Shown piece after piece: positions 2,099-64,000 of a DNA stretch of 64,000 nucleotides (position 1 is the first letter of the stretch; each line of letters starts with the position of its first letter). The notes under the pieces are model-generated. The model did not search any database. It had not been told where the DNA came from and saw only the letters and a list, made by a program, of their open reading frames with translations. The DNA lies in assembly GCA_002104905.1 (NCBI GenBank), contig MCFE01000445.1:9746-73745 (forward strand). The letters are read 5' to 3'. Made by a program: the position numbers and the translations under genes. Source of the DNA: Basidiobolus meristosporus CBS 931.73. Lineage: Eukaryota > Fungi > Basidiobolomycota.

Positions 2099-3110
2099 TT
2101 ACTTGCTGGCTGATTTTTCCCATTGAGAAACGCCGCCCATGAAGGAAGTAATCGCACTGTCAAGAAGCGTTAGTGTATGAGCGCCAAGAATCCAAAAACC
2201 CAGGACAACTTACCCTACAGTGCCTACGACACCTTCATTAAGATGGATGTAGTTCAATCCAGCAAGTGGAATAATCATGTCAAGGGAATCAATAACGAAT
2301 TGGTACAAGACACCATTCTTGATGCTAATCAGGATATACCAATTTAGACATTGCGTTCTGTTATGAATTCTTAACTATGCACTTACGTTGACAAGTTGGC
2401 CAATTGAAGCTTGTTGTTAGCGGTTGAGCCACCGGCCTCAGTTTTCACAGCCTGAACTCTCTTCAAAACGCCATACTCAAGATACAATTGTCTCAATCTG
2501 TAGAGACCGGCCAACCAGGAGAACACAATGGCGTACAGCCAGTAGCGGTTGGAATGATCATTGTACTTCTTGATGTTTTTGAACTTGTACAGTCCTACGC
2601 TGTCAATCTATTGCTTCACGTTAATAGATCTCTTAGGAGGTATCACCACTGCATACGTACCCAGCACAGCATGTCATAAATGAAGTAGAGGCCATTGGCA
2701 CCGCATTTACCAATATTACAGATTCTAAGAACGGTATCTTTGACTGAGTAGGAGTTGGCGATGCCCTGTACCATTTCGATGGGCTTACCTAAACGCAGTA
2801 CTACATACAAATTCAGATACGAAGAATTAGCGAATTGTAGATGGTGACACTCCGTCGGATGTGGCGCAACGCCAGCTGTCCCGATGCATCCCGATTGTTA
2901 ACCGTATTCCGTGTTCGTGTACTTACGTCTACGAGCAAGACCCAAGTGAGCCTTCAGCTTTTCAACTGCAAGATAGGCATCTTTCGAATTTTGACGCAAG
3001 AGGTACCAGGAATAGAAACGGGCAAAGTACTGAACAAATCGATACACTTTGTCACGGCCATTGGTAGTAGCGAGGAAATTTACGTAAGTGTTAACTGTGT
3101 TGGCAACCAT
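2099..3110 (-). CDS. PEX11: Peroxisomal biogenesis factor 11, multi-exon
   Basis: Exon 1 MVANTVNTYVNFLATTNGRDKVYRFVQYFARF...LGLARR is the Pex11 N-terminal GRDK-x-x-R signature. Later exons read LMRLGKPIEMVQG and ITSFMGGVSQWEKSASK*. Confidence 0.93.
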
Positions 3111-4106
3111 TTCTGTAGCGTATGTGGAGACGAGGACTGGAGAATTAAATAAAGAGCGAACTTGGAATCTGACTGTATGAAATATGTTCTTGGACCCCCA
3201 GGCTGCGCTGCAGTCGTTCACTGTTATATAGCAGTACTGTGGTGGCTCGGCGTATCCCGGATGAAGTTGTGACCTGGATTTCATGTATCACAACTCTGGG
3301 ATGAGATAATATATTGATAAAAATCTCATCTCTGAATTCGAAATGCTAGCGGACAGCTGCTAATTGGCCAGGGCCGATATTTGCTTGGTCATGGCTACCA
3401 AACCTTGCCTTGGCCAGAATTACTTCCCACACATCAAGATGATACATTCCACGCTCTAAATGGGAAGCTTCTAAAAGAAAATACCACTAGATGGATTCTG
3501 GTGGATCAGTGGTTTCTCACTCGAGACAAGCTTCTGTGGCTCCATATATAAATGATTTGGGTTCGGCCAGCTCCCATTGACACCCTTCGATCGGAGAGTG
3601 TATTTACTGTGGGGCCAATACTGCCCCGAACCCATGTAATGCAGCGATCATTTCATGCAGCGTTGGAGATGGAAATCTCTGGGGCAACAGCTCCATGGTG
3701 TATTATCAATCTCTATTGCAACATACGGGCAATAAAGGCTATATCGTATCCACCAGATCCCAAGCCTCAGCCTCAACACACGCCATCGCTTGGTGGATCT
3801 TTGCGGCTTTCGTTGCACAAAACACCGTCAGAGATTCCAAGATCTCAGGGTAGAGTTAGCTGGGAGTTACGCAAGATTGTTAAATGGCAGCTTAAAATAA
3901 GCGATTTAGCGTAGGCCGATGATTACACGAAATTCAAGTTCGAGAGTCAGCATCCAACAGAAGGTGGGTTATTTTAGGCGGTGATAATCAAACTATCGAA
4001 TCAGAGCTCGCCGCTCGGCAAGAAACGCGATGGAGCCAATAGCTACCAAGAATAAAGCCGTCTTATGATCATGATAACAATAAGTTTCTAGCTTTCGTGA
4101 GCGTGA

Positions 4107-5592
<1,486 letters not shown>

Positions 5593-7826
5593 CCGGCTCC
5601 TCCCCACTTGGATCCCTCGGCTTCACCTTTGACCCTCGGATGTTCACGGTTTCGGAATTTTGAGACGTTGCTGATTTTTATGTTCTCTTTTTGATTGATC
5701 AATTTATGAATGTGTAAATAACTAATCTAGTAAAATAGCATATTTCTCCATTTCAATGGTCTACCCCATTCAAGGCTGCACCCAGACCCATGGAGTTGGT
5801 TGGAAACTTACGACCTGCATCAGACTGAAGGCTCAGGTCAAGCTTTGCAACCACCCATGAATGGTACAGTCTCTGTTGGGAAGGCCTGAGGAAATATTGC
5901 CACTGGCAGTTTGCAACACCCCCATATCTTTTTTGTATTGTGTTGTATTGTATAGTAGATAGCCATGACAATTATAAGATAAGTGACTTGATGCTCACAG
6001 GTCTGGTTCCAACTAGATAGTGTGCCTTCCAAGTGCTCTCTCTACTCTAGGCTGTCATGGCCTGAAGGGGGCTTTGAAAAGGAATCTTGAGATCTGGTGA
6101 GGCTAGTAGAGGCCCAATTGTCTAGTGGCCATTTCGATTGTCAGACACGGACAAGGAATGTTGAGCAGCCAGGGATGGGTCAGTCGGAAACCATTGCGCG
6201 CTCTATGCTGCATTCGTGTGCAACCCACCCAAGCAACCTTTGCAATGCTCCAATCCGGCAAATGCTCACATTATAAATGCATAATCGTGGGGGAGGGCAC
6301 ATTCTTGTTGGACGATTTCTCCCGGACAAGAAATGGGGATCTAGACAGTGACTTATGCCACTAGAACTTGCACACAATGTCTTGGTGTGGGCCAGAATCT
6401 GGTGCAAAAAGGACCCGGTGAGGACAAATACCTTTCCAAGTTCCCTCTTTGTTTGCCCAAGTTACAGATTCTCAAGCTTCCGCCACCGTTGGTGCCACTC
6501 ACTTGAAACATGAGTACTCGGCAGACATTGTCTACGGACGGTGTAACCAAAGTGATATCAAACCTCTCTTGTTGATCATTTCATATCCAGTACAATGAAT
6601 AAATTCCTCAAGGGGATTGTTGTAGAGGGGGATTTAGGGGAATGTAACGAGGCATCCTGTTTATTCTCCTAAGCAGCGGCCGTATTCCTTCCGAAACCAT
6701 TGTCCTGATAAAGCCATATGATTAATTATGCACGTAGGTAACGATGAAGCAGATCAATGAGCAAGCCAGCAGTGGTGCCTTGTGAGATGGGTGTGGTATT
6801 AAGTGGACAACGGTTGAGAAATACTGGATTTTTCTTGAACGATGGAAATGGGTTTCCGGTTGGCAGACAAGATTTCGTGATTTTCCACATAATTAGATGC
6901 TTTCCAAGGCGGCTCGTCGTAGAGCAACCATAACAGTTGTCGCACCTTGCTGGGGGATCGGTTAGCGTTCGCCGAGTTGAAGATGGGCGGCGACTATTCG
7001 CCAGGCCCCCTGCCCCCTTCCCTCCCCCAGTGACACCGGAGGAAGATGGCACTGCATACCGCATGCATCCAGAAGAATGCAGCTCGGGATGATTTGTGAA
7101 TTACTTAATCATGGGTATTTCTAGAAGTGGCCACTGATTGATGTGGTCATTTGGGTGCCAGAATCAATTACTGGCTACGGAGTTGTTCGCATCCTACCTG
7201 ATTGTTCGGTACATTGGGAGCACGATTGGCGCAATGGGCAAAGGCAGAACGGAGATTTTTCCAGAATCGAAATACCGAACAGGCTGTGAAACATTGGGTT
7301 GCTACGCTCGGGCATCACCAGGTCGAGTCATCACCAGATGCTGCTGGTTCTGGGATGGTCCACTGCATCCCCTCATAGGGCAATGGTCAAGGTACAAACA
7401 TCATGCGGTGATGCCATGCATCCATTATGGGGAGAGGAGCCATCGCAAGATTCCCAAATCCTGAATCGCCCAGGAAATTTCGCTAACCCAAGATGTTTAC
7501 GCACCTGCAGCACCTGCACACGTCGGGGAAGATGTGGCGATGCCTGCGATTTCTACCGCCCTGCGATGAATGGGATTCCACGCACGGGAATCGATTTCCA
7601 TGGGGGCACACTGATTAGGCGAAGTGACACATCTTGGGTGCCTTGAGCCGCCAGAACGCTCCTATTGGTGAGCAGGGTTGTATTATCAATCCTTTCAATA
7701 TTTATACATAAATATGGATCACTTGGCGAACGGTATATACAAGAACTGATAAGACATGAGGATGTGATAAAGCGAGGAAAGGGACTTGGAATATGAAATA
7801 CATAGTCATAGGGCCCGCGTCCCTAT

Positions 7827-9099
7827 TCACCGATGAAACCGGTGCTCCAATACGTTGGGCATGGAGTATCTGGGTTGTGAATATACAGGTGATGTGGAAT
7901 GGTACCCTACACATTCGATCGATGGGAGCAGTAAGGACACCGGGTTGGCCACGGAGCTCTTTCGACCATGGTTGTACGGGTAGGGCGCCACCACCCTGTT
8001 ACGCTTGGTTTCCATTGCTCTATAACTGTGGAAATCAAGCTCACTGTCTCTCCGCTTTCGGGAAGAGGTGTTGGCGATGACATTGGGGACTGGCTTCATT
8101 GCAGCTAACCAATGCTCCGATATCATGTACAGGGATGGTTGGTTGGTGGGGGTTGGGACAGGGTTTCGGGCCATGGGGAGGTACTTTCCGTTGTAAGGGT
8201 GGAATGTGCTTCTAGGTGTAGCCTTCGCGGAAGGGGCAGGATGTGATAGATACTGTCTAGACTTTTTGTGGGTGAAGCTGTCGGAGTAGCGACGCTGATT
8301 GCTATACGAGGTCTTGGTAGTTGATGCGAGGCTCGGGGCAGACGACGCAGGCTTGGCGAGGAGCGATTCAAGTTGGGAGTTCAACTCTCCTGGCGTAATA
8401 CGCAAGTCGAATTTCTAGGAACAGGCTGTTTAGTTTGGGTGTTGCCGAGGGCTATCCAATGCCACTACTTACCAACAACTCGAGTAGCTGCCGTTCCATC
8501 AGATTCACCTCGGCCAGGGAGAATAATGATGTGTATCGAGCCCAGTACGTGTTCTTCGGCGATGCGTCATTGAGATATTTGCTGGCGATGATGAGGGCAG
8601 CCAAAAATATCCGATGGCAAGTACACTGCATGCCTGTTGATGAGGGTCTATGAGTGTCGAGATCGGGGATATATTCTACATCAGATGCCTACCTCGTGCA
8701 AACTCGGGCAAGCTCTGTCTTAAACGATCCAGGTATACCATGGTGCATAGGAACGATGGCGTATGAACCTTCGATCTGGCCGCTAGCTCTCTGATGAATG
8801 TGCTGAGGGGTGGGATTTGTGGCTGACGCTCCACGGGAGAGAGATAGGATCGGTAGGAGCCCACAGTGGTGGGCGTGGAAGGAGGTGATGGCAGTTGTCT
8901 ATTATCGGAGTCGCAGGTGGGTGTACACTTGATCACCGCAGCCGCTTTGGATGTCACCAAGTCTAGGAAAGCAACGACGGTTTAGAACGAGGATGTGGGG
9001 AGAGAGGGAGCCAAGGGACATACCAATCATAGCATCAGTGATTGGGGAGCTCATCAGGGCAGCCATGACGCTGTCACTAGGGCCATTGGCATCCGACAT
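7827..9099 (-). CDS. Pho85/CDK5-type cyclin (Pcl1/Pcl2 family), 4 exons
   Basis: Cyclin box IPPLSTFIRELAARSKVHTPSFLCTMVYLDRLRQSLP / GMQCTCHRIFLAALIIASKYLNDASPKNTYWARYTSLFSLAEVNLMERQLLELL / KFDLRIT, then a low-complexity tail. GT-AG introns are consistent with the frame. Confidence 0.92.
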
Positions 9100-12000
9100 G
9101 TTCGTTTGGTTTGGTGGGCCCGAGGGAGTGGAAGCGATGAACAAGAAATGTGGGAAAATGGCAAAGAATCGCAGTGATTGCTGATTTACAATACGCACAA
9201 GGGTAATCTATCTTTCAAATTGTTGACAAGTGCAATGGTGTTGATCAAGGATATTTCTGGTGGGAAGGAGCCGTGGCTTTTATACCATGAACAACGAGAG
9301 CCATCCTGATCGGAATGGCTGAGATGATTAGAGCAGCAGGCAGCTACCAATCTGATACCCGCGTTTCCTACAAGCAACAACTCAGATCATAAGATTATAG
9401 TCAGGTTTTGGAACAGGGGCAATCATATAGGATCCGTAATAGATTTTGTAACAAATCCATATGGCACTGATGCACAAGTCTCTAAATTTACAAGCACCAC
9501 TCGCCAATCACAGCCAGCCTTCACGTTACTAAATCTCAGCGTAGTCACAGGTTGACTCTGGAAAGTTCAACAGTGATTTCAACTGCGCAATAGGGATGCA
9601 TCCTTTTTGGTAGGATATGTCATATTGATCCTAATTTAAGCTAGAATATTCCTGGCCAAAAGCGAAGTACCTAATCATGATTGATTATGAAGAACTGCAC
9701 AATACAGACCTAACGTTGCCCAGTAATATGCACCGGAGCTTGCACAAGAGCTCATCCCATCAACCGAGCCATTTGGGCCAACGCTGTTGCGAGCGGTCTG
9801 CGTGATTCGTCCGTTGGTGGAATGATTCTTCCTTTGCCAACACACCCAATATTGCGCTGGCAGAGCAATCTGGGTGATTCAGACTCGGGTGCGGATTGCC
9901 AAATGATGTCAACGTGCCAGGCTGAACGTGATGATTCCATTTGCCCAGATCAATGCATACAATTTTAGAGGCCCTATATCCGTCAAGTCCAAAAGGATGC
10001 TGCTGGTGCGTAGCGTCGGTGAAATAGGAGTTTGTGTACTGCAGAGGAGCTGGTGCGCTGTTTCATCGATTACTAATTCGCGAGATAGGCTGGCACGGAG
10101 TCAACCACGATACCAAGCCTCGATCCCCTATGCCATCCTTGCCCCCTACAAGGCAGCCATTCCGATTCATGGTCCAGAAACCATTAGCCCCAACTTCCAA
10201 GCGCTAGGGATAAGTCCCACTCGGATGGATGTGTTGCTGGCACCTTGTGAGCAGCTAGATTGCAAGCGGTGTGCTCTGGTGAAAGTCTTCGCTAGCTTGA
10301 GTGGTGCCCACGGCTTTGCCGCATCAATGGCATGGCTGGCTGGATTCCCACTGCTGCTGACCAGGGTTTCCACAGCCGCTGCAAGCGACTGCGCAGGTTG
10401 AGGTTGCGGTGAGAGACTGAGTCATCACTGAAATCAATCATAGGGAACCGAGAAGTCCATCTATTTGATGTCTTATGGTGTGTGACACTAGGGTGAGATG
10501 GGTGGGGGTTTGGTTCGGTTTGTTCCATTGCTTTGTAAAACTGCTTGGTTAGGGAGCAGATGTCCAACATCGTACAAGGAATGCTATGAAAGCCCTTCAT
10601 TTTACTTTTATCCGACTGAATCGCAGCAGCGGTCCTGAGGTTGTGTGATGAGAACGCTCGGGTTGGACCAATTGAGCCACATAGTGAGGCAGACCGATAG
10701 GCCTAATTTGGAATATCATCTCCTTTGGTATCAAAGGTTCCAGTAGAAAATACCGGGCAGCATGCTGAGCAAACTGGCTGGCAGAATGCAGTAGCTCCCA
10801 AAGTCGAATGGAGCAGCGATAATCTGGCTCTGAAACACTTGTTACAGCTCAACATCACGGAGCACTGTAGGTGTTCCGACTTGGATTCTACCACCAGTAG
10901 TGGGGCTGGCGCATAACCGGTTGACCGATGGAGACATGTACCGGAATAGTCTGACATTGTTTTCATGTGCTTGCTGCTGTATCAAGCAATGGGTTCGGCT
11001 GGTTTGGAATCTAGTCGTCCCAAGTATGGGTGGAGAGTGTGAATGCCCGCTGAATCCCACTGAAGCCCCCATCGATCCCGTTCAAGCTCAAGCGGCCTTC
11101 TGGTGTCAAATGACAGGGATGCCTACCAGATCGCAATTAATATCCGCAGATCGTTCTGAATTTCCTATTCACCTGGTGCGCTGGGCTGTTTGGACATGAA
11201 ATGACCGGTTCGCTCGACTGCATAGGAAATTAGGGGTTGACACCTCTCATGGACGTTTCATCCCTTAAAGCAACCCTCCTGCAACGGAGAGTTTGGCGTA
11301 GCTGTGGGTTGCGATCCGAGTAGCCGCTGTAGGAAGAAGGATGTGTACCACCACTGGCACCAGGCCCCCGATCCTGTTGGTCTTGAGGATTTGTGGTTAC
11401 CAAGACATTGGTGGTGTTTCGATGTTCTGATAAGGTTGCCAGCCCAGCAGACTGTCTCAAGGGAATACAGAGTCATTGGCTTGGGTGAGGTTAACCATAT
11501 GTTTTAGGCACTTCTTTCCTGACTGCTTTGATTTCTTAAATGGAACCGATGAATTAGTATGAAACGCATCATCTGAATGGATGGTTGAAGAGGGGGATGC
11601 CACTTGTGCTACCATCTCCGACAACATCAGCCATGAACGTCACTCAGCCCAATCGTCCATCCAATTTTAGCAGCTTCCGCATTAGACGAAGACCGTTCTT
11701 TCTGATAAGAGTCACTGGTCCTGAGATTTTGTTGAACGCGATGGGGGATGTCTAGGGTTAGACTATACTAGTATATTAAAGGAAGCCAAAGCACCACTCT
11801 TTGCATCATTGTCTGATGTTTTAATCTAGTGAGAATTGGGCAGTGTCTGAGACCTTGAGGCCATGGATTTGGGTTCGTCGATGGAAAATACAAACTCTGG
11901 GGGTCATATGATGGCCAGCCAATTCCGCTGCCATCGATAAATGATGGTAGCCAATCCCCATTGGCACCGGCACCGTCACTGCAAAGGATCCACGATCATT

Positions 12001-54474: not shown

Positions 54475-55109
54475 GTCAGCCTTCTAGGAGTAAGAATTGA
54501 GAACCGTCCTCCAGGAGAATCATGACCTCATCGATCTTAGTTCACATGTGCAAAATTTTCAACAAACGCCTTGTTACTGCTCAAAATGAATCTGGTGAAG
54601 AAATGAATGTCCTTGAATAAACATATGCCATCCTATTCATCGATAATGCTACAAAAATGGGTGTCATTTGTGGGAGAACGGTCGATGAGTTTAGGCATAG
54701 TTTGATAGCACCTGGGCGCATATCAGGGAAAATTGCATGGATGACTGGTAGGGGAAGTGTATGCGATTGAAATCTAGTGAGAAAAGTATACTGGCGTATA
54801 CATTAGTTTGGTTGATCAGATTAACATTACTATGACGATTGGAGCATTTGTTCAAGGCAAGTATTTCAACCACCAACTATATTCGCTGATGTTGAACAAT
54901 TGTTGGCTATTTAATCCACAACTGCAAGGACATTCTGTACATTGGCAGAAAGTTGTCCATAGGTTAAGCACAATATGATAAAGCACGAGTGACAGATTCA
55001 GTGGCATACCAGTTGAGAATAGGTGTTCTACTACTTGACCTACCTTGTGGAGCAAAATGCTTGTCTCCCTTTACAATACACTCTTCTGGACTGATACATT
55101 GTAGGAAAT

Positions 55110-55441
55110 TGTTGTAAGAGTCTTGGAGATATTGGAAGTGATTGGGAGAACAAGTAGATTATGTGGTTTTCACTTAATGATTTATTGAATGTAAAAGTAG
55201 TATTTATACTTTTACCTTGTCTTGGCATTACAAACACGTATAATAGGTTAAGGAAGGTCCCAAGAACATGTGTGCAAATTTTGGGGCTGTTTGGACAACT
55301 TATCAAATTTTCATGTTCTGGGTAAATATTCTAAGTAAATCCCAACAAGGAATTTGGTCAGTATTCTCTAGGATTTGAGGGTAATGATCTAAGTGACTAA
55401 GTTAGGTGAATATTTAGGTGGAATTCCGAATTTTTACAACA
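55110..55441 (-). mobile_element. Complete solo LTR (332 bp, short variant) of the same copia family; no TSD
   Basis: TGTTGTAAG...TTTTTACAACA is the reverse complement of the LTR. Flanks gaaat / attgt do not match. Confidence 0.93.
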
Positions 55442-55585
55442 ATTGTACCACTCTGTCTGAATCAAAATCTGCATTTCAATCTGACCTGCTTTAAATTGAT
55501 AAATATATCTGAATGTTGGGAATGTAAGCTAAAAACCCAAAATAGCCATTTCAAGATTAAAGATCTGTAGCCACATTAATCACAG

Positions 55586-56035
55586 TTAGGGGGGGGGGAC
55601 AACCACCAACTGGTGAAATCCTAATTATAGTTGAAACAAAGAAGCCAATGCTACTGTGGTAGCTTTGATTGAAGAGTGTGCAGCTGAGGTGAAGTGGCTG
55701 GTAAGTGAATAAGTATAAATGCTAGCTTCTTAGTGCTCAAGACACTGTTCAATGGCAAGGTGGGTAGCAAGAGGGGTGAGAATTACTTGTCAACAACATT
55801 AATAAGGGGTACATGATATAGATTGATACCCATCATGAAGGAAGTGTGCTGCTGCAAATATTGCTACCAAAGGTCTGTCAAGTATTTCAGATTGACCCAC
55901 TGGGGCTTTTCTGACTCAATGATATATTAAGCAAACCTCTTGACATCCAAAATCTCCAAGTATAGTTCTCCGGCAGGAGCCAGGTGTAGTGTGATGAGTT
56001 TTCTTCCAGGACTTGATCAGTGGGTTATTGCAGTG
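55586..56035 (-). mobile_element. 5'-truncated, diverged 3' fragment of LINE family A
   Basis: Aligns with the last ~450 bp of 58554-60136 (CNNPLIK.WK.THHTTPGSC.RTILGD). Ends in a 10-C tail at TTAGGG (55586). Confidence 0.88.
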
Positions 56036-56036
56036 G

Positions 56037-56110
56037 TTAGGGGGATAGAAAGCCACAACAGGTGAAATCTTTATTTCAGCTGAAACAAAGCCAGCACTGT
56101 TGTGCATCAA
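56037..56110 (-). mobile_element. Very short 3'-terminal fragment of LINE family A
   Basis: ttagggggatagaaagccacaacaggtgaaatctttatttcagctgaaacaaagccagcactgttgt matches the family A 3' UTR and end of ORF. Left junction is TTAGGG; right end approximate. Confidence 0.78.
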
Positions 56111-56477
56111 CATTTAGAACTTGGCCAATTTCACTCCATTAGAAAATCCAATACCCTAACGGATTTTCACTGACCCAAACATAACTAATCCCAGTTATAG
56201 TTTATTTTATCCCTTCTCAGAACCAATTTTTAGCTGTCACACCTGATTAATTTTCATGTGGTCATTACATACTCAACTGATCTACTAAGCCTTTCCAAGT
56301 GATTAGACTTGTTCCATTGGATAGTGCCACATAGTGCCAGCCTGTTTACAGTGCCAGATCAATCTGGTACCATCTGGCACTATAATTTCTACCATCATGC
56401 CAGTGGTAGGTTATAGTTACTGGTAATTTTACTCAATTTTACTTATGTTGCTCAGAGTAGTGCTTTTCTTGCTTTAT

Positions 56478-57362
56478 TTACCCTTCATAATGCTCCAGAC
56501 ACATTTCTCCCAGTGGATGTCTTCTTGTATGAGTATACTGTGCATTGATAAGTATCTTAACTATTTTACCTATTCTGCTGTTTTCTCCTATATATGACTT
56601 TCCTCTGTATTTACCTGCCAATATGCTGAATCTCTTCAGATATCCAAATGTATGCTCTACCCTCACTCTGAAATGATTAAATATTTCATTGTAGAGCTTC
56701 TGCTTCCTGCTAAGCACACCATTCCTTGGCTTCCTATAAGCTGTAATACATCCTAATCTCTGACAATCCTCTCCTATATAAGCTAAGTCTGCCATGCATT
56801 TCTCCCCTCTACTGAATTCTGGATGATTCTCTACCCAGAGTGCTTTGTCATGCCTACTTCCAGCAAATGGCCCACTAAACCAGATGATGTTTCCCTCAAT
56901 GTCAGACAGGGCTTGAAACTTCACAGAGTGTGCCTTGTACTTGCCAGAATAAAAGTGCCTCTGCCCTCTAGAAAGTCTGTTAATCCTGCCTGGGAAGGTA
57001 TCCAAAATACTCCTTATATGGAACCTGTTGCTGAACACTCTGGGATATGGAAGTCTATTGGAGCTTCTAAACCTAGTACTCCAAGCTTGCTCCAAGTCAT
57101 TCATACCCTCTGCAAGGTGGTTCTCCATTGCTGTCAGCAGAGAATGAAAGCTTCTAGGACATTTGTTGCCATGGATGGTGGGATGAAACCTTGTAGGGCA
57201 ATAGTTCTGGTAATAGCAGAGAAGCTTAACAAGGGATCTCCTTGAGTAGATTGGGGTAGATGGACCACAGTACTTGGTATAGATCTCCTCTAGTGTGTCA
57301 AAAGGAAATCCAGTGGTAGAGATGGGATTGATGAGAAAAGACCATTCAGATGAGTAAGTCAT
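56478..57362 (-). CDS. DDE transposase, DDE_Tnp_4 type (PIF/Harbinger-ISL2EU / IS5-like), intact 294-aa single-exon ORF
   Basis: Catalytic triad ILDTF (D), MADLAY (D), RVRVEHTFGYLK (E), plus FYSGKYKAHSVKFQ, SGPFAGSRHD and YRKPRNGVLS..QKLYN motifs. Element termini not resolved. Confidence 0.9.
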   Translation of the reverse strand: MTYSSEWSFLINPISTTGFPFDTLEEIYTKYCGPSTPIYSRRSLVKLLCYYQNYCPTRFHPTIHGNKCPRSFHSLLTAMENHLAEGMNDLEQAWSTRFRSSNRLPYPRVFSNRFHIRSILDTFPGRINRLSRGQRHFYSGKYKAHSVKFQALSDIEGNIIWFSGPFAGSRHDKALWVENHPEFSRGEKCMADLAYIGEDCQRLGCITAYRKPRNGVLSRKQKLYNEIFNHFRVRVEHTFGYLKRFSILAGKYRGKSYIGENSRIGKIVKILINAQYTHTRRHPLGEMCLEHYEG

Positions 57363-58160
57363 ATTAAGATTGGGAGGATTGCACTGAGTTGATTTGATTT
57401 GATTTAGTGCGATCAGCTTTATTTATCTGATTTTCCATGCATTATGATTAATTCTCCATCAATTGCCATGTATCCCATCATTATGTTGCAAAAATCATCC
57501 TCAAACATTGACTGGGAATTTTTATTGATGTTAGGGTGTAGGTGTTATAATAAGGGCTAGGAAAAGGTTAGAAGAGCAGGGGGTCTGGGGGACACAGCCC
57601 CCTAGAGAATAAAAAAGCAGGGGGTTTGGTGGATGCAATCCCCCATACTGCTCCCATACTCTTTAAATACCCGTTGGATTACTTTTCTCTCATTCTTGGT
57701 TCTGGTCCCTTAGGGTTAGAATTCCTCCTCCTAACCCTTATCACCCTAACCATAAATATTTTTACCCTACAATTGGCACATTGTCTGCTCATATAGTGGG
57801 CATGTCTGGGCCAATGTTTGTCTCCCTATACTGTCCATATGCTATGTATAAGTCTTGATGACTATTTAACTAATAAATTGTTATTTTTAATGTATATCTA
57901 AAAATTAATGGGATTCATCCCAATCTGACCACAATCCCATATTTTGATAAGCTTTGGGCACCATAAATTGCGCGGCCCTTATATGATCAAAAAATTCATG
58001 GCCAATACAAATTTTCTGTAACCCAATTGCTTTTACCAAATATAAAGTGTATCCCAAAGCTCAATATATATTATGGCTATAATAGACACTTTATTTGACA
58101 CCATCGCATCTACTACTTATGTTCTATGCGCACATGTATCCCGCGGGAATTGTAAAACTT

Positions 58161-58468
58161 AGCCACGTGGTACAAAAGTGCTTTTATTTTTCATCATGAT
58201 AGTTTTACATGAGTTCCTTACGCACTTTGAAAGTATGCAGTAGCCATACCCCAACAGGTTTTTAAGGATATCCACTAGCTACGTCTACTTGTGTCTAGTG
58301 GGAGCCATCAATCATCAGCCACGCAATACTGAAATGCTTTTATTTTTCATCATGCTAGTTTTGTATGAATCCCTAACGCACTTTCATAGTGCGCGGTAAC
58401 CATACCCCAACAGGTTTTAGGATACCCACTTGCTACATTTACTTGTGTCTAGCGGGAGTTATCAATCA
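58161..58468. repeat. 156-bp tandem duplication (58161-58314, 58317-58468)
   Basis: Both units read agccacg...tgcttttatttttcatcatg...ccataccccaacaggtttt...acttgtgtctag.gggag..atcaatca. Confidence 0.9.
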
Positions 58469-58471
58469 GGG

Positions 58472-58549
58472 TTAGGGGGGAGGAAAGTCACCAAGTGGTG
58501 AAATCTTTATTTACTTATGACAAGTATCTAAAGAAGCCAAGTTAATCGT
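58472..58549 (-). mobile_element. ~80-bp 3'-terminal fragment of a family-B-like LINE, flanked by AGGGTTAGGG direct repeats
   Basis: aggaaagtcaccaagtggtgaaatcttt...aaagaagccaa matches the 3' end at 60141-60215. AGGGTTAGGG at 58468-58477 and 58550-58559. Confidence 0.8.
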
Positions 58550-58553
58550 AGGG

Positions 58554-60136
58554 TTAGGGGGGGGGGAGACAGTCACCAACAGGTGAAATCTTTATTTCAG
58601 TTGAAACAAAGAAGCCAGAGCTACTGTTGTAGCTTTGATACAAGAGTGTGTAGCTGAGGGGAATTTGCAGGTAAGTTAATAAGAAGTGATGATAGTTCTT
58701 CAGTGCTCAAGACACTGTTGAGTGGGAAGGGGGGTAGCAAGAGAGGTAAGAATGACTTGTGAACAACATTAATGAGGGGAATGTGATAAGGATTGATATT
58801 CATCATAAAGGGAGTGTGCTGCTGCAGATATTGCTGCCAAAGGTCTGTCAAGTACCTCAGGTAGGCTAGCTTGGGTTTTTCTGACTGCAGAATGTAGTGA
58901 GCAAACTTCTTGACTTCAGGATCTCCAAGTATAGTTCTCCAGCAGGAGCCAGGTGTTGTGTGGTGTGTTCTCTTCCAGGCCTTAATCAGTGGGTTGTTGC
59001 AGTTGTGAAGTCTGAGGTATAATCTGGTTCTAAGGTAGAGAAGTCTGATCTTATAGGGCATAAACCTAAAAGCACCAAGAATAGCATGTCTGTAGGGGCA
59101 TTCAGGCAAATGAGGCACCAAGGAGGTAATGCACCATACTGCAAACTTGTCAAGCTTAGTGCAGTCTCTAGAAGTAAGAGAGAGAAGTGGTAAGCCAAAT
59201 TCCAGGACAGGGAAGACAAACTGCTTGAGTAGAAGGAGGCAGCTGGGAGCTGAAGTTGTAGGAGGAGTAACAGCCAGTAGCTTGTGGAGTGCCTGTCTTG
59301 CCAGGATAATTCTCTTCTTCAGGTGTGCTCCAGAGTCTAGTCCTGTAGGAAGGAAAGGAAAGCCAAGATATGTAGCAGAAGCCTGAGCAGGTAGAGTGGA
59401 GTTCTCCAAGTTGATGGGAGAGCCCAAAGGTACTGTCTTTGCAGTGGAAAGCTGGAGATTATTCTTCTGCAGATACTGGTGGATGGTCTGGGGGTCTTGT
59501 TGCACATTGGAGGAGGATATTCTGATGTCATCAGCAAAGAGAGTAACCAGGCAGTCAGCTGAGAGTCTTGGGAAATCATTCAGGAAGATGGCAAACAGTA
59601 TAGGACCAAGCACAGAGCCTTGTACCACTCCATTAGGAACTGAGAACACAGCTGATTGCTCACTTGGGTTCAGAATTCTTGCCTGTGGATCCAGAAACAG
59701 AGACCTGACAAGGAGGGTGAGAGAGATACTGGGGAAGCATTGCAACTTGGACCAAAGCAGATTTCTGTCAACTGAATCAAAGGCCTTGGTAATATCAAAC
59801 AGAACAGAGGGATACTTGCACTGGAGAGAGTGATCTTGGCTAAGTATGACTGCATATTCCAAGGAGAGGCCAGGAACAAAGCCAAACTGTGCAGGATGAA
59901 ACTTGAGGGAGTCAGAGTAGAGCTCCTGAGCAAGCAGAAGCTCAAACACCTTTCTGCAGGTGGGCAGCAGAGATATTGGCCTGTAGGAGCTAGGATCCAG
60001 GTGCTTTCCTTTACCCTTGTACAGTGGCAGAACATTTGCAAAGGACCATTCCTCAGGAGTAGAAAGCTGGGCTGAGCATTGTTGAAACAGTGGAAGCAGA
60101 AGTGCAGACATGGCCTTGGTACTAGTCTTCAGAAGC
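58554..60136 (-). mobile_element. Non-LTR retrotransposon family A, copy A1, 5'-truncated; open RT + C-terminal ORF (58621-~60136)
   Basis: RT motifs YRPISLLPTCRKVFE, QFGFVPG, FDITKAFDSVDR, GVVQGSVLGPILFAIFLND, LFADDI, YLGFP. 3' UTR ends at TTAGGG (58554). Confidence 0.95.
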
Positions 60137-62624
60137 TTAGGGGAGGGAAAGTCACCAAGTTGGTGAAATCTTTGTTTGAGTTAAGAACTAATCTAAGTAC
60201 AAATAAAGAAGCCAATTAAGAGGTCTAGAACCTCTCTAATAAGTAATCTAATTTATGTTTTGTTTCATCTCTAATGTTTGTTTCAATAAAGTAAAGCTCA
60301 TCAGGGGTAAATATAAAATTCAGGGGTTTTGGGGGAAGTACAAATTGTAGATGTTTCTGATCAATATAATCCAAGACTGGAACCCAGCCTGGGATTAGGT
60401 GTAGTAGGAAAGGTGTGTGGACTTGTAAGTAGCTCTGCCACATAGATCTTAGATGGTCCTGAGCCAGTAGTCTTGGTTTCTCAGCTTTTTGAAGTTTTGA
60501 AGCAAGCTCTGTTACTACAGCAGAGCCAACCAGGTTGTGCCAGCAAGAAGATTTTAGGGAGGAGTTAGTTTGAAGCCATTGTTTGATGGAGGGGTTATGT
60601 GATTTCTGAAGTTTGACTAGGAAGGAAGCACGGAGATAGATCATTCGGATTTGGTATGGGTAGAACCCAAAGGCTCCATTAGTTGCATGGATATAGGGAG
60701 ATACTGGAAGATAAGGTACCAAGGATCTGATACACTGATGGAGAAATTTATCCAGGCGGTGAAGCTCTCTGGAGGTTAGGGGTATAATGTGGAGACCAAA
60801 TTCAAGTACTGGCAGTACATGCTGCTTCAGAAGTATAGGGATCTTTTGAATTGGAGTGTCTGGAGTGACTACTACTAGAAGCTTTTTGAGAGCCTGTTGG
60901 GCAAGACGGATCCTATTGTTCAGGTGGAGCTTTGAGTCAATCCCATGTTGACAAAATGGCAGACCTAGATACATTGCAGTTTGTTGTGGCAGAATGCTAG
61001 TGTTCTGTATAGTTGTAGTGCACCCAATTGGGACTGTCTTGGAAATTGAGAGTGAGAGGTTGTTGGCAGCCAAGTACTTCTCAATGATGGCAGTGTCTGC
61101 TATGGGATTAGGGGTAGCAATCTTGATATCATCCGCATAGAGAGTTAGTAGTGGATAGGGAGAGTCTGGTGAGGGGCCTTTTGGAAATAAAGGAAAGTTG
61201 TGTAGGAATATCACAAATAGTAAGGGACCTAGTACAGATCATTGGACTACTCCATTTGGAACCTCATAAGTCTCTGATGTGCAACTTGGATGCAAAATTT
61301 TGGCTGAGTTCTCACAAAATAGAGAACGTACAAGAAGGGTCATTGGTAGTGTGGTAACTGCTAATAGCTTTCTCCAAAGCAGAGCTCTGTCCACAGAGTC
61401 AAAGGCTTTAGTAATGTCAAACAGAATGGTTGGCAATGAGAATTGAAGTGAATGATCATGGCTTAGCACTACAGCCATATCCAAGGAGAGTTTGGGCAAG
61501 AAGCCAAACTGAGAAGGATGGAATAGATATAGTTGAGATTGCAAGGATCTTGCAATTATAAGCTCAAAGATTTTCCGGCAGGTTGGCAGGAGTGAAACTG
61601 GCCGGTAAGAACCTGGGAGTGAGTGTTTCCCCTTCCCTTTGTATAAGGGTATTACATTTGCCTGTGACCAGGCCTTTGGGGTAGTCAATTGTTGGGCACA
61701 GATAGAGTAGAATGGGAGAAGTAAGTGACTCATTTTGGAGTAGCACACCCGGAGTAGATTGTAGGTAATCAAGTCATGTCCAGGTGCCGTATTTGCAGGA
61801 AGCTTCTTTAAAATTTTCTCCAGAAGCTTTGCTGAAATCAAAATTGGAGATGTTGGACTGCTGGATATGTTACCAGTATGGTAGAAAGGAGGAGTGGGAT
61901 GCACAGATGAATCAAAGAATATAGGGGCCAGTTTGTCTGGTGTGGTATACTCCTTGCTTGGGGTCTCATGGCTTTGTATACTCTTGATATGGACCTTGTG
62001 GTGGCATTCATATTTACTAGGGGCAAGGTATCCATGATATGAGCCCATAATCTAGTATGCTCAGTGATCTGTAGTGACTTGGAGTAGGAGATTGCGCTTT
62101 CCAGGAGGTTCTGTGTTTTTGGGTTAGGGAAACATAGGTAGCTGGAATTTAAGGCAGAAATGATGGATTTCCATTTAAGTTGGTTTGCAGATGGCTTTTG
62201 GTAGGACTTGGTGGGCAGGGCCAGACAGCCAGTGATTATGATGAAATGCTGGTAAAATAGCCATAATGCATTTACATCATCACAAATCCATGCAGGTAAG
62301 CTGGGAAATGCATATTCTGTAAGCAAGGATAGGTAGTTGGCAAAGTCCTGTGTCTGTGATACTGAAGCTTTGGCTGGCAGGATTGTAAATGGCTGAAGAA
62401 GGGTGCCAATTGGTAGGGTTTTTCTGGCAGAAATGATAATATGTATTGGCTTGTGATCAGATTTCTCTAGTGAACCACAGCTGATATCCTCTGGAATGCT
62501 TGTAACCTGGTGGATGTACTGTAAGGCAGCTGGAGTAGCTGTTACCCAGTCAACACAACGTTGAGCTTGCTGAGTGTTTACAGCGACCAGATGGTTTTGT
62601 CGGAGGAACTTTGTAAAGTGCTCC
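60137..62624 (-). mobile_element. Non-LTR retrotransposon family B, 5'-truncated within an APE-like endonuclease; decayed (frameshift ~61965, TGA at 61239-61241 in the QGS motif)
   Basis: Endonuclease C-terminal motifs VDWV...SDHKPI; APGHDLITY, YRPVSLLPTCRKIFE, FDITKAFDSVDR, GVVQ*SVLGP, LYADDIK. 3' end at TTAGGG (60137). Confidence 0.92.
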
Positions 62625-64000
62625 TTAGGGGGGAGACAGTCACCAACAGGTGAAATCTTTATTTCAGTTGAAACAAAGAAGCCAGTGCTACTGTTGTAGC
62701 TTTGATACAAGAATGTGTAGCTGAGGGGAATTTGTAGGTAAGTTAATAAGAAGTGATGATAGTTCTTCAGTGCTCAAGACACTGTTCAGTGGGAAGGGGG
62801 GTAGCAAGAGAGGTAAGAATGACTTGTGAACAACATTAATGAGGGGAATGTGATAAGGATTAATATTCATCATAAAGGGAGTGTGCTGCTGCAGATATTG
62901 CTGCCAAAGGTCTGTCAAGTACTTCAGGTAGGCCAGCTTGGGTTTTTCTGACTGCAGAATATAGTGAGCAAACTTCTTGACTTCAGGATCTCCAAGTATA
63001 GTTCTCCAGCAGGAGTCAGGTGTTGTGTGGTGTGTTCTCTTCCAGGCCTTAATCAGTGGGTTGTTGCAGTTGTGAAGTCTGAGGTATAATCTGGTTCTAA
63101 GGTAGAGAAGTCTGATCTTGTAGGGCATAAACCCAAAAGCACCAAGAATAGCATGTCTGTAGGGGCATTCAGGCAAATGAGGCACCAAGGAGGTAATGCA
63201 CCATACTGCAAACTTGTCAAGCTTAGTGCAGTCTCTAGAAGTAAGAGAGAGAAGTGGTAAGCCAAATTCCAGGACAGGGAAGACAAACTGCTTGAGTAGT
63301 AGGAGGCAGCTGGGAGCTGAAGTTGTAGGAGGAGTAACAGCCAGTAGCTTGTGGAGTGCCTGTCTTGCCAGGATAATTCTCTTCTTCAGGTGTGCTCCAG
63401 AGTCTAGTCCTGTAGGAAGGAAAGGAAAGCCAAGATATGTAGCAGAAACCTGAGCAGGTAGAGTGGAGTTCTCCAAGTTGATAGGAGAGCCCGAAGGTAC
63501 TGTCTTTGCAATGGAAAGCTGGAGATTATTCTTCAGCAGATACTGCTGGATGGTCTGGGAGTCTTGTTGCACATTGGAGGAGGATATTCTGATGTCATCA
63601 GCAAAGAGAGTAACCAGGCAGTCAGCTGAGAGTCTTGGGAAATCATTCAGGAAGATGGCAAACAGTATAGGACCAAGCACAGAGCCTTGAACCACTCCAT
63701 TAGGAACTGAGAACACAGCTGATTGCTCACTTGGGTGCAGAATTCTTGCTTGTGGATCCAGAAACAGAGACCTGACAAGGAGGGTGAGAGAGGTACCGGA
63801 GAAGCATTGCAACTTGGACCAAAGCAGATTTCTGTCAACTGAATCAAAGGCCTTGGTAATATCAAACAGAACAGAGGGATACTTGCACTGGAGAGAGTGA
63901 TCTTGGCTAAGTATGACTGCATATTCCAAGGAGAGGCCAGGAACAAAGCCAAACTGTGCAGGATGAAACTTGAGGGAGTCAGAGTAGAGCTCCTGAGCAA
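62625..64000 (-). mobile_element. Non-LTR retrotransposon family A, copy A2, running off the window; ORF open from the edge to 62688
   Basis: Differs from A1 only by scattered substitutions; same RT motifs and 3' UTR. 3' end at TTAGGG (62625). Confidence 0.95.

What the first reader, a model, noticed from the sequence alone, without database searches (positions are those of the whole stretch)
55586..64000. Candidate new system: LINEs whose every 3' end is joined to the telomeric hexamer TTAGGG, in head-to-tail arrays
Six of six 3' junctions, from two diverged families, read TTAGGG on the + strand directly followed by the antisense element end: 55586, 56037, 58472, 58554, 60137, 62625. All elements share one orientation and form two stacks (55586-56110; 58472 to beyond 64000), with truncated units separated by a single TTAGGG. 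The polarity (G-rich strand running rightwards, element 3' ends facing the gene-rich side) is what priming from a 3'-OH ending in TTAGGG predicts. Model 1: sequence-specific nicking by the APE-like endonuclease with serial reuse of one site, as for insect TRAS/SART. Model 2: terminal addition to chromosome ends, as for HeT-A/TART or Athena/Coprina PLEs. The fungal telomere-targeted elements I know (MoTeR, Cnl1) use RLE-type nucleases, so an APE-type one would be new to my knowledge.
Basis: partly seen in the sequence, partly recalled or inferred. Interest (0 to 1): 0.92.

Follow-up and report, generated by a model that had tools for sequence, protein, structure and literature searches.

The report
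Telomere-tailed LINE stack at a chromosome end
The right end of this Basidiobolus contig is a one-way stack of LINE-type jumping genes and their passengers, each ending in one to three units of the chromosome-cap repeat instead of poly(A); this is a cap-associated retroelement set with a cutting enzyme not reported for such elements in fungi.

Summary
Observation confirmed. All six plus-strand TTAGGG sites sit exactly at the 3' ends of minus-strand retroelements, and the window's last base is the contig end (Basidiobolus meristosporus, MCFE01000445.1).

Each unit ends in two conserved hairpins, a C-run and 1-3 telomere units, with no poly(A). In 27 non-redundant ends from 8 contig stretches, 25 carry the hexamer and about 21 abut the start of another unit. 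Flanks beyond the tract are unrelated, so the hexamer arrives with each copy and is not a leftover of a long telomere tract.

The units are two related APE+RT LINE families, a distant third family, an ORF1-only element, a short non-coding passenger and a satellite-bearing unit.

Another contig shows a real 30-unit telomere sitting directly on a 5'-truncated copy with the same polarity. Four contig ends share that polarity. Older copies lie proximal in three arrays. Interstitial tracts almost never exceed 3 units.

This favours growth at the distal, chromosome-end side over nested insertion into earlier tails. Whether the endonuclease is used remains unresolved.

Two other follow-ups in this scan reached a similar reading on other DNA of this genome. 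No published description was found. I class it as a new variant of telomere-associated retrotransposons.

The parts
55586..56034 (-). Unit F: old 3' fragment (about 445 nt) of a family-1-type LINE. The tail complement TTAGGGGGGGGG lies at 55586-55597. This is the proximal end of the array and adjoins single-copy DNA.
   Evidence: 16.9% diverged from the family-1 consensus; the flank 55457-55585 has depth about 100, and contigs span the junction with 0 differences.
56035..56110 (-). Unit G: about 70-nt 3' stump of a family-1-like LINE, with tail complement GGTTAGGGGG at 56035-56044.
56111..57524 (-). Harbinger-like DNA transposon lying between the two stacks (DDE_Tnp_4 ORF 56478-57362). Its borders were not resolved. 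It is not part of the retroelement system.
   Evidence: PF13359, E 1.5e-21; multi-copy
57525..58468 (-). Unit R: non-coding array unit. It has 155-bp tandem repeats (58161-58468) and a fixed 3' end ...ACACCTACACCCTAAC, seen as GTTAGGGTG at 57530-57538 on the + strand. It lacks the LINE hairpins.
   Evidence: In other copies the 5' start varies (window 58468, L001, L007, L008), each time right after another unit's tail. The 3' end is constant and carries roughly 1 to 3 telomere units.
58469..58548 (-). Unit C: last 80 nt of the short non-coding passenger (SINE-like), with tail complement GGGTTAGGGGGG at 58469-58480.
58549..60136 (-). Unit B: family-1 LINE, 5'-truncated. The RT/C-terminal ORF 58621-60111 is open. 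The 3' UTR hairpins lie at 58567-58640 and the tail complement TAGGGTTA+G10 at 58549-58566.
   Evidence: (RVT_1, E 1.4e-25)
60137..62624 (-). Unit D: family-2 LINE (51% aa identity to family 1), 5'-truncated inside the APE domain. It retains the VDW and SDHKP motifs. The reading frame is broken by a stop at about 61240 and a frame change near 61840-62050. Tail complement TTAGGGGAGGG lies at 60137-60147.
62625..64000 (-). Unit E: family-1 LINE running off the contig end, with tail complement TTAGGGGGG at 62625-62633.

Best explanation
Window 55586-64000 is the inner part of a subtelomeric, one-way array of non-LTR retrotransposons of Basidiobolus meristosporus.

Shown:
- Every unit lies with its sense strand pointing from the contig end inward.
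- The LINE-type units end in two conserved hairpins, a C-run and then 1-3 units of CCCTAA, with no poly(A).
- The same 3' module is shared by two autonomous APE+RT families, an ORF1-only element and a short non-coding passenger.
- A distant third LINE family and unit R carry the telomeric tail without that module.
- A genuine 30-unit telomere caps a 5'-truncated copy in the same orientation on another contig.
- Where ages differ within an array, the older copies are proximal.

Inferred mechanism:
- The RNA 3' end (C-run plus UAACCC...) is complementary to the telomeric G strand.
- A DNA 3' end at an eroded or very short chromosome end, or possibly a nick made by the element's endonuclease near such an end, pairs with it and primes reverse transcription.
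- Each addition therefore lays down a short telomeric joint plus a new unit distal to the previous one.
- 5' truncation comes from incomplete copying or later erosion, and telomerase re-caps the end.
- The plus-strand TTAGGG is the complement of this short tail, made anew at each addition. It is not a relic of a long telomere tract.
For: - Anatomy and ubiquity of the tail. Of 27 non-redundant ends, 25 carry the hexamer and about 21 abut another unit.
- Genome-wide joints from variable 5' truncation points to the tail start, with 0-2 extra telomeric units between.
- Shared 3' structure with some compensatory changes.
- APE plus RT.
- Window end equals contig end.
- Sense strand points inward at four contig ends (window, L001, L014, L016).
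- (TTAGGG)30 directly on a truncated family-1 copy.
- Divergence from the family-1 consensus, distal to proximal: 1.1/4.3/5.8% (L001), 1.1/1.45/16.9% (window), 1.0/1.0/2.0% (L007). No array shows the reverse order.
- Joints of at most 3 units, bar one irregular joint of about 5, against a 30-unit cap.
- An 11-kb block ending in a family-3 tail is joined to different proximal sequences on three contigs and is also present on a fourth. This is typical of exchange between chromosome ends.
Against: - The APE domain is conserved across families 43-63% identical. That argues the endonuclease is used, which pure end-addition does not need.
- Copy number looks very high: summed depth 1e5-5e5 against about 100 for unique flank. 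That is hard to fit at chromosome ends alone unless ends are very many or arrays are long.
- Some arrays have several kb of non-array DNA distal to them (L007/L008).
- If additions were primed by normal 30-unit telomeres, long interstitial tracts should exist, and none was seen. The model therefore needs additions to happen only at nearly bare ends.
- The age gradient rests on three informative arrays (roughly 1 in 50 by chance). One array is flat.
- No RNA 3' end, empty site or target-site duplication could be established.
Confidence: 0.5

Rival explanations
1. Endonuclease-driven, sequence-specific insertion into telomere-type repeats (TRAS/SART-like). The APE nicks TTAGGG tracts, both the real telomere and the short tails of earlier copies, so elements pile up head-to-tail wherever a tail exists.
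For: - Conserved APE with all catalytic motifs.
- Arrays with non-array DNA on both sides.
- High copy number.
- Polarity at true ends would also be fixed under this model.
Against: - The ten primer-side flanks next to non-unit DNA share no motif.
- Nesting into an earlier tail places the newcomer proximal to the founder, so founders should be distal and oldest. The observed order is the opposite.
- Random nicking in a 30-unit cap should leave joints of up to 30 units. All but one of 27 hairpin-type joints have 3 units or fewer, and the exception is an irregular tract of about 5.
Confidence: 0.2
2. Ordinary dispersed 'stringent-type' LINEs whose element-encoded microsatellite tail merely equals the telomere hexamer. 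Arrays would arise from reverse-transcriptase template jumping between RNAs, unequal crossing-over and accumulation in repeat-rich junk, with no link to chromosome ends.
For: - The hairpin plus short tandem-repeat tail shared with passengers is the classic stringent-type layout (PMC4176376 for the concept).
- The tail is present at every kind of flank.
- A tandem triplet in L007 has two units with the same truncation point, which shows recombination acts on arrays.
Against: - Four of four contig ends have inward polarity, and one is capped by a real telomere lying directly on a copy.
- Three LINE lineages as far apart as 28% RT identity, plus unit R, all use the same hexamer.
- About 78% of ends abut another unit.
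- There is an age gradient.
- Arrays of 5 or more units and over 10 kb are long for single template-jump events.
Confidence: 0.2
3. Assembly artefact: repeats were collapsed or chimerically joined at short telomere-like words.
For: Contigs break inside these repeats.
Against: - Independent read-derived contigs span the 55586 junction without differences.
- The same junction anatomy recurs in eight contig stretches of this assembly.
- It also recurs in contigs from five other sequencing runs and two other assemblies.
Confidence: 0.02

Closest known systems
HeT-A / TART / TAHRE of Drosophila (own knowledge; PMC5537684 abstract)
   Same: - Polar head-to-tail arrays at chromosome ends with 3' ends facing the centromere.
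- Variable 5' truncation.
- A Gag-only partner beside APE+RT elements.
   Different: - Drosophila lacks telomerase repeats, whereas this fungus has a 30-unit TTAGGG cap.
- Drosophila joints are oligo(A), whereas these are telomere units.
- Clade membership was not tested here.
TRAS / SART of Bombyx (own knowledge; PMC7265360 abstract)
   Same: APE-type LINEs tied to the telomere repeat, coexisting with telomerase-type repeats.
   Different: - TRAS/SART sit inside long (TTAGG)n tracts at a fixed nucleotide and carry poly(A).
- Here the joints are nearly always at most 3 units, the flanks are non-telomeric and there is no poly(A).
MoTeR / FoTeR / Cnl1 of fungi (PMC12857005)
   Same: - Fungal non-LTR elements at chromosome ends.
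- Units separated by short interstitial telomere repeats.
- Truncated copies are present.
   Different: - Those elements encode a REL endonuclease C-terminal to the RT and belong with CRE/SLACS.
- These have an N-terminal APE, an ORF1 and no REL domain found by Pfam.
Athena / Coprina endonuclease-deficient Penelope-like elements (own knowledge; abstract of 10.1101/2021.04.23.441226)
   Same: - The element's 3' end carries the complement of the telomere repeat.
- Location is terminal, with head-to-tail chains.
   Different: - Those elements lack any endonuclease and have a telomerase-like PLE RT.
- These have an APE and a LINE-type RT (best solved relative is human L1 ORF2p).
Stringent-type LINE/SINE partners such as UnaL2/UnaSINE1 and ZfL2 (PMC4176376; own knowledge)
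   Same: - Conserved 3' stem-loop followed by a short tandem-repeat tail of variable copy number.
- The module is shared by non-autonomous passengers.
   Different: - The tail repeat there is unrelated to the telomere.
- Copies are dispersed and not in polar terminal arrays.
Zepp of Chlorella and GilM/GilT of Giardia (own knowledge)
   Same: LINE-like elements stacked one way next to telomerase-made telomeres.
   Different: They have poly(A) tails, and GilM/T lack an APE. No telomeric tail has been reported for them.

Membership tests
APE-type non-LTR retrotransposon (LINE) | Reverse transcriptase of the LINE type | tested here: met
   RVT_1 with E 1e-25 to 1e-27. The best solved relative is L1 ORF2p, E 7e-14.
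APE-type non-LTR retrotransposon (LINE) | Apurinic-endonuclease-like domain N-terminal to the RT, with catalytic motifs | tested here: met
   - Pfam Exo_endo_phos scores 21-23 bits, just under the 24.5 cut-off.
- N, D (in place of E), Y, GDxN, D and SDH motifs are conserved; most sit in invariant columns among five copies 43-63% identical.
- The model has low confidence (pLDDT 55), but all top Foldseek matches are APE1 or L1-EN.
- The nearest Atlas clusters are Exo_endo_phos+RVT_1.
APE-type non-LTR retrotransposon (LINE) | Target-site duplications flanking copies | tested here: inconclusive
   No copy with both flanks in unique DNA was available. Inspection of the F-G stack and of L003 showed none.
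Stringent-type LINE with passenger SINEs | Conserved 3' stem-loop plus short tandem-repeat tail, shared by non-autonomous elements | tested here: met
   - Two stems (10 bp and 5 bp) are kept in 12 diverse ends, and 4 pairs have compensatory changes.
- The same module is present in the passenger and in the ORF1-only element.
- Recognition of the module by ORF2p cannot be tested with these tools.
TRAS/SART-type telomere-repeat-specific LINE | Insertion inside long telomere tracts, with repeats on both sides | tested here: not met
   Joints are nearly always 3 units or fewer, and the far flanks are unrelated sequence. The cap is 30 units.
TRAS/SART-type telomere-repeat-specific LINE | Poly(A) tail; R1 clade | tested here: not met
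   No poly(A) at any of the 27 ends. Clade placement was not done.
HeT-A/TART-type terminal retrotransposon array | Polar head-to-tail array at the physical chromosome end | tested here: met
   Polarity is inward at four contig ends, and one is capped by (TTAGGG)30 directly on a truncated copy.
HeT-A/TART-type terminal retrotransposon array | Arrays replace telomerase repeats | tested here: not met
   A 180-nt TTAGGG cap is present.
MoTeR/FoTeR/Cnl1 (CRE/SLACS-like) | REL endonuclease downstream of the RT | tested here: not met
   Pfam finds no domain after the RT, and an APE lies upstream. The definition is from PMC12857005.
Athena/Coprina EN-deficient Penelope-like elements | No endonuclease; PLE/telomerase-like RT | tested here: not met
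   An APE is present and the RT is nearest to L1 ORF2p.

The most novel reading that the evidence does not exclude
A telomerase-positive fungus keeps a consortium of APE LINEs, an ORF1-only partner and non-coding passengers whose RNA 3' ends mimic the telomerase template. When a chromosome end has eroded to almost nothing, its G strand primes reverse transcription of these RNAs. The elements would then act as a second, retrotransposon-based end-healing system working alongside telomerase. That would be a living intermediate between ordinary telomeres and the Drosophila solution.
Probability: 0.3. Interest if true: 0.9.

Novelty: new variant of a known kind. Interest (0 to 1): 0.75.

Why it matters
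Telomere-associated retrotransposons are known from a handful of lineages, and each informs how chromosome ends and mobile elements trade services.

This case combines features not reported together:
- an APE-type LINE with a telomere-repeat tail in place of poly(A);
- a Gag-only partner and passengers sharing one 3' recognition module;
- several divergent LINE lineages converging on the same tail;
- coexistence with a normal telomerase cap, in an early-diverging fungus.

It offers a system in which priming by chromosome ends and priming by endonuclease nicks could be separated experimentally. It also bears on how a Drosophila-like telomere could evolve from a telomerase-based one.

On the practical side, these arrays explain why this assembly breaks at many contig ends.

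Tried and rejected
- **Paralogous 'empty sites'.** I first compared tails next to 58468, L001:6185 and L008:13115 with uninterrupted copies of the neighbouring repeat, and concluded that the target lacked TTAGGG. This was withdrawn. That repeat (R) is itself an array unit with variable 5' starts, so these are unit-to-unit joints and not filled versus empty sites.
- **Empty allele of the F-G stack.** None was seen in read-derived contigs.
- **Telomere-like motifs near insertion points.** The motifs 7-9 nt away at three sites turned out to belong to the ends of a Harbinger-like transposon or of R. They lie in inconsistent orientation.
- **Target-site duplications.** None was recognisable.
- **tRNA head for the short passenger.** ARAGORN found none.
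- **RT clade placement.** Not achieved. The databases reachable here carry no clade labels, and the closest non-Basidiobolus RTs are only 31-38% identical.
- **Structure model of the APE.** Only low confidence.
- **Literature searches.** No description of these elements was found. PMC1890498 (Athena/Coprina) is not held.
- **Harbinger insertion idea.** The idea that the transposon inserted precisely at a TAA of a tail could not be confirmed, because no matching 3-bp duplication was found.
Full report
**Source and location.** Proteins encoded in the stretch match hypothetical proteins of Basidiobolus meristosporus CBS 931.73 at 64-96% identity. An NmrA-like gene in the window places it at MCFE01000445.1 bases 9746-73745, so window base 64000 is the last base of a 73,745-base contig. 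The right-hand stack therefore runs to a contig end. That end lies inside a LINE, not in telomere repeats.

**The observation.** TTAGGG is not enriched in the window as a bare word (37 found, 29.6 expected). The six cited sites are special because each is followed by a G-run and the antisense of a conserved element end. On the sense (minus) strand every unit reads: GGCTTCTTTRTTT, a loop, AAATAAAGATTTCACC, a loop, GGTGA, 6-8 pyrimidine-rich bases, a C-run, TAA, then 0-2 further CCCTAA units.

**The units.**
- Family 1 comprises units B, E, F and G.
- Family 2 is unit D. It is 51% identical to family 1 over the RT and C-terminal part.
- A near-complete family-2 copy (L001:2159-6185) and full-length relatives in contigs from other runs and assemblies (L002, L010, L012, L013) show the layout. 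ORF1 has a zinc-finger-like motif and a coiled coil. ORF2 has an APE-like domain followed by the RT.
- The 80-nt unit at 58469-58548 is the end of a short non-coding passenger.
- An ORF1-only element of about 1 kb carries the same 3' module.

**Endonuclease type.** Pfam Exo_endo_phos matches fall just under the curated cut-off (21-23 bits against 24.5). The N, D, Y, GDxN, D and SDH motifs are conserved among copies 43-63% identical. A low-confidence model (pLDDT 55) finds only APE1 and L1 endonuclease as top structural matches. The nearest Atlas clusters are all Exo_endo_phos+RVT_1. No REL domain is found. The elements are APE-type LINEs. Their clade was not determined.

**3' module.** Twelve diverse ends fold into two stems. 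One is 10 bp and contains the AAUAAAGA. The other is 5 bp, UCACC/GGUGA. Loop length between them varies, and four pairs show changes on both sides. The AATAAA is thus part of a helix, and there is no poly(A). This is the layout of stringent-type LINEs with passengers that share the 3' end (concept: PMC4176376).

**How general is the tail.** I examined 27 non-redundant ends of this type from eight contig stretches of the assembly.
- 25 carry the hexamer immediately after the C-run.
- 2 go straight from the C-run into the next unit.
- The tract after the C-run is 0-15 nt, apart from one irregular tract of about five units.
- About 21 of the 27 abut the start of another unit, usually a 5'-truncated one.

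Read-derived contigs show thousands of matching pieces. They also show many joints from variable truncation points to the exact tail starts at 58476, 58560, 60137 and 62625, with 0-2 extra telomeric units in between. Flanks of ends that do not abut a unit are diverse, with consensus agreement 0.43-0.45. Their ten primer-side ends share no motif. One contig shows a copy of the Harbinger-like transposon broken at a non-telomeric point and followed by TTAGGGGGG plus a family-1 end (table 5c). The hexamer therefore comes with each copy and is not a remnant of a long tract at the target.

**Other carriers of the tail.**
- Unit R (window 57525-58468) has 155-bp tandem repeats and a constant 3' end ...CACCCTAAC with roughly 1 to 3 units.
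- R starts at different places in the window, L001, L007 and L008, each time right after another unit's tail. In L014 its repeats run to the contig end.
- A third LINE family (L007, about 5700-11026) is only 28% identical in the RT. It ends ...CTAAAAG+CCTAACCC(TAACCC).

Recognising R as a unit voided my earlier 'empty-site' comparisons.

**Relation to real chromosome ends.**
- Contig MCFE01001166.1 ends in 30 perfect TTAGGG units (L016:14706-14885).
- These lie directly on a 5'-truncated, young (0.57% diverged) family-1 copy on the minus strand.
- This shows the fungus's telomere repeat, and it shows the same polarity as in the window.
- The sense strand points inward at all four contig ends examined: window, L001, L014 and L016.
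- An 11-kb block ending in the family-3 tail occurs on at least four contigs. On the three where its inner border could be read, it is joined to different proximal sequences through tails of different length. This is the pattern expected of exchange between subtelomeres.

**Order of events.** Divergence from the family-1 consensus rises from distal to proximal:
- L001: 1.1, 4.3 and 5.8%.
- Window: 1.1, 1.45 and 16.9%.
- L007: weakly, 1.0, 1.0 and 2.0%.
- Contig 243: flat.

Nested insertion into an earlier tail must place the newcomer proximal to the founder, so the founder would be distal and oldest. The data point the other way. Both points weaken TRAS/SART-like targeting and favour growth at the distal side on ends that have almost no repeats left.

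**Evidence against pure end-addition.**
- The APE is conserved.
- Summed depth is very high relative to the unique flank (1e5-5e5 against about 100; not a strict copy number).
- Some arrays have several kb of non-array DNA distal to them.
- A triplet in L007, two of whose units share one truncation point, shows that recombination also reshapes arrays.

**Verdict.** The hexamer, however, is a short tail added with each copy and not a captured piece of telomere. The TRAS/SART analogy fits worse than distal addition. The mechanism remains inferred.

**Prior work and earlier scan results.** Known fungal telomere non-LTR elements are REL-type, and I found no description of these elements. Two other follow-ups in this scan reached similar conclusions on other pieces of the same genome. 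I did not use them as evidence, but I found a capped end independently.

Noticed in passing
window 57525-58468: Unit R is a non-coding repeat with 155-bp tandem repeats (58161-58468). It has an inner palindromic part rich in telomere-like words (GGTTAGGGTGATAAGGGTTAGG ... CTAACCCTAAGGG). It behaves as a 5'-truncating array unit although it lacks the LINE hairpins. How it is propagated is unknown.
   Followed up: partly
window 56111-57524: Multi-copy Harbinger-like DNA transposon (DDE_Tnp_4 ORF 56478-57362). Its end regions carry CCCTAAC-type words. LINE tails are found within a few bases of these ends at other loci (L001:9041, L016).
   Followed up: partly
window 55100-55456: A different repeat with extreme summed depth in read-derived contigs (2-5 million against about 100 for the adjoining unique 55457-55585). 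Pieces of it also occur in runs of a second sample.
   Followed up: no
L007:5700-11026 (also L008, L016, L017): Third, distant APE+RT LINE family (ORF1 530 aa, ORF2 998 aa) with a telomere-unit tail but a different 3' UTR. It forms the inner end of an 11-kb block present on at least four contigs.
   Followed up: partly
L015 reverse strand 2703-7240: Full-length family-1 copy inside an array. Its 5' UTR contains an internal CCCTAACCCTAA that is absent from the homologous 5' UTR of relatives in other samples (L002, L010).
   Followed up: no
L001:10790-18266: Five tandem genes of 181-231 aa with a CHAP domain (PF05257, typical of bacteria and phages) lie just inside the array near a contig end.
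   Followed up: no
L007:11492-13296: Three consecutive family-1 units, two of them with an identical truncation point and identical joints. This indicates tandem duplication by unequal exchange rather than independent additions.
   Followed up: partly
window 58400-64000: Where these copies differ from the bulk of genomic copies, transitions dominate. Window G against bulk A is the commonest class on the + strand (22 sites). Other first-stage notes mention CpG-free ORFs here.
   Followed up: no
L002-L006, L010-L013: Closely related full-length elements, also head-to-tail with telomere-unit tails, occur in contigs from several other sequencing runs and assemblies. An ORF1 relative is annotated in Basidiobolus ranarum. 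ORF1 relatives were found nowhere else in the protein database.
   Followed up: partly
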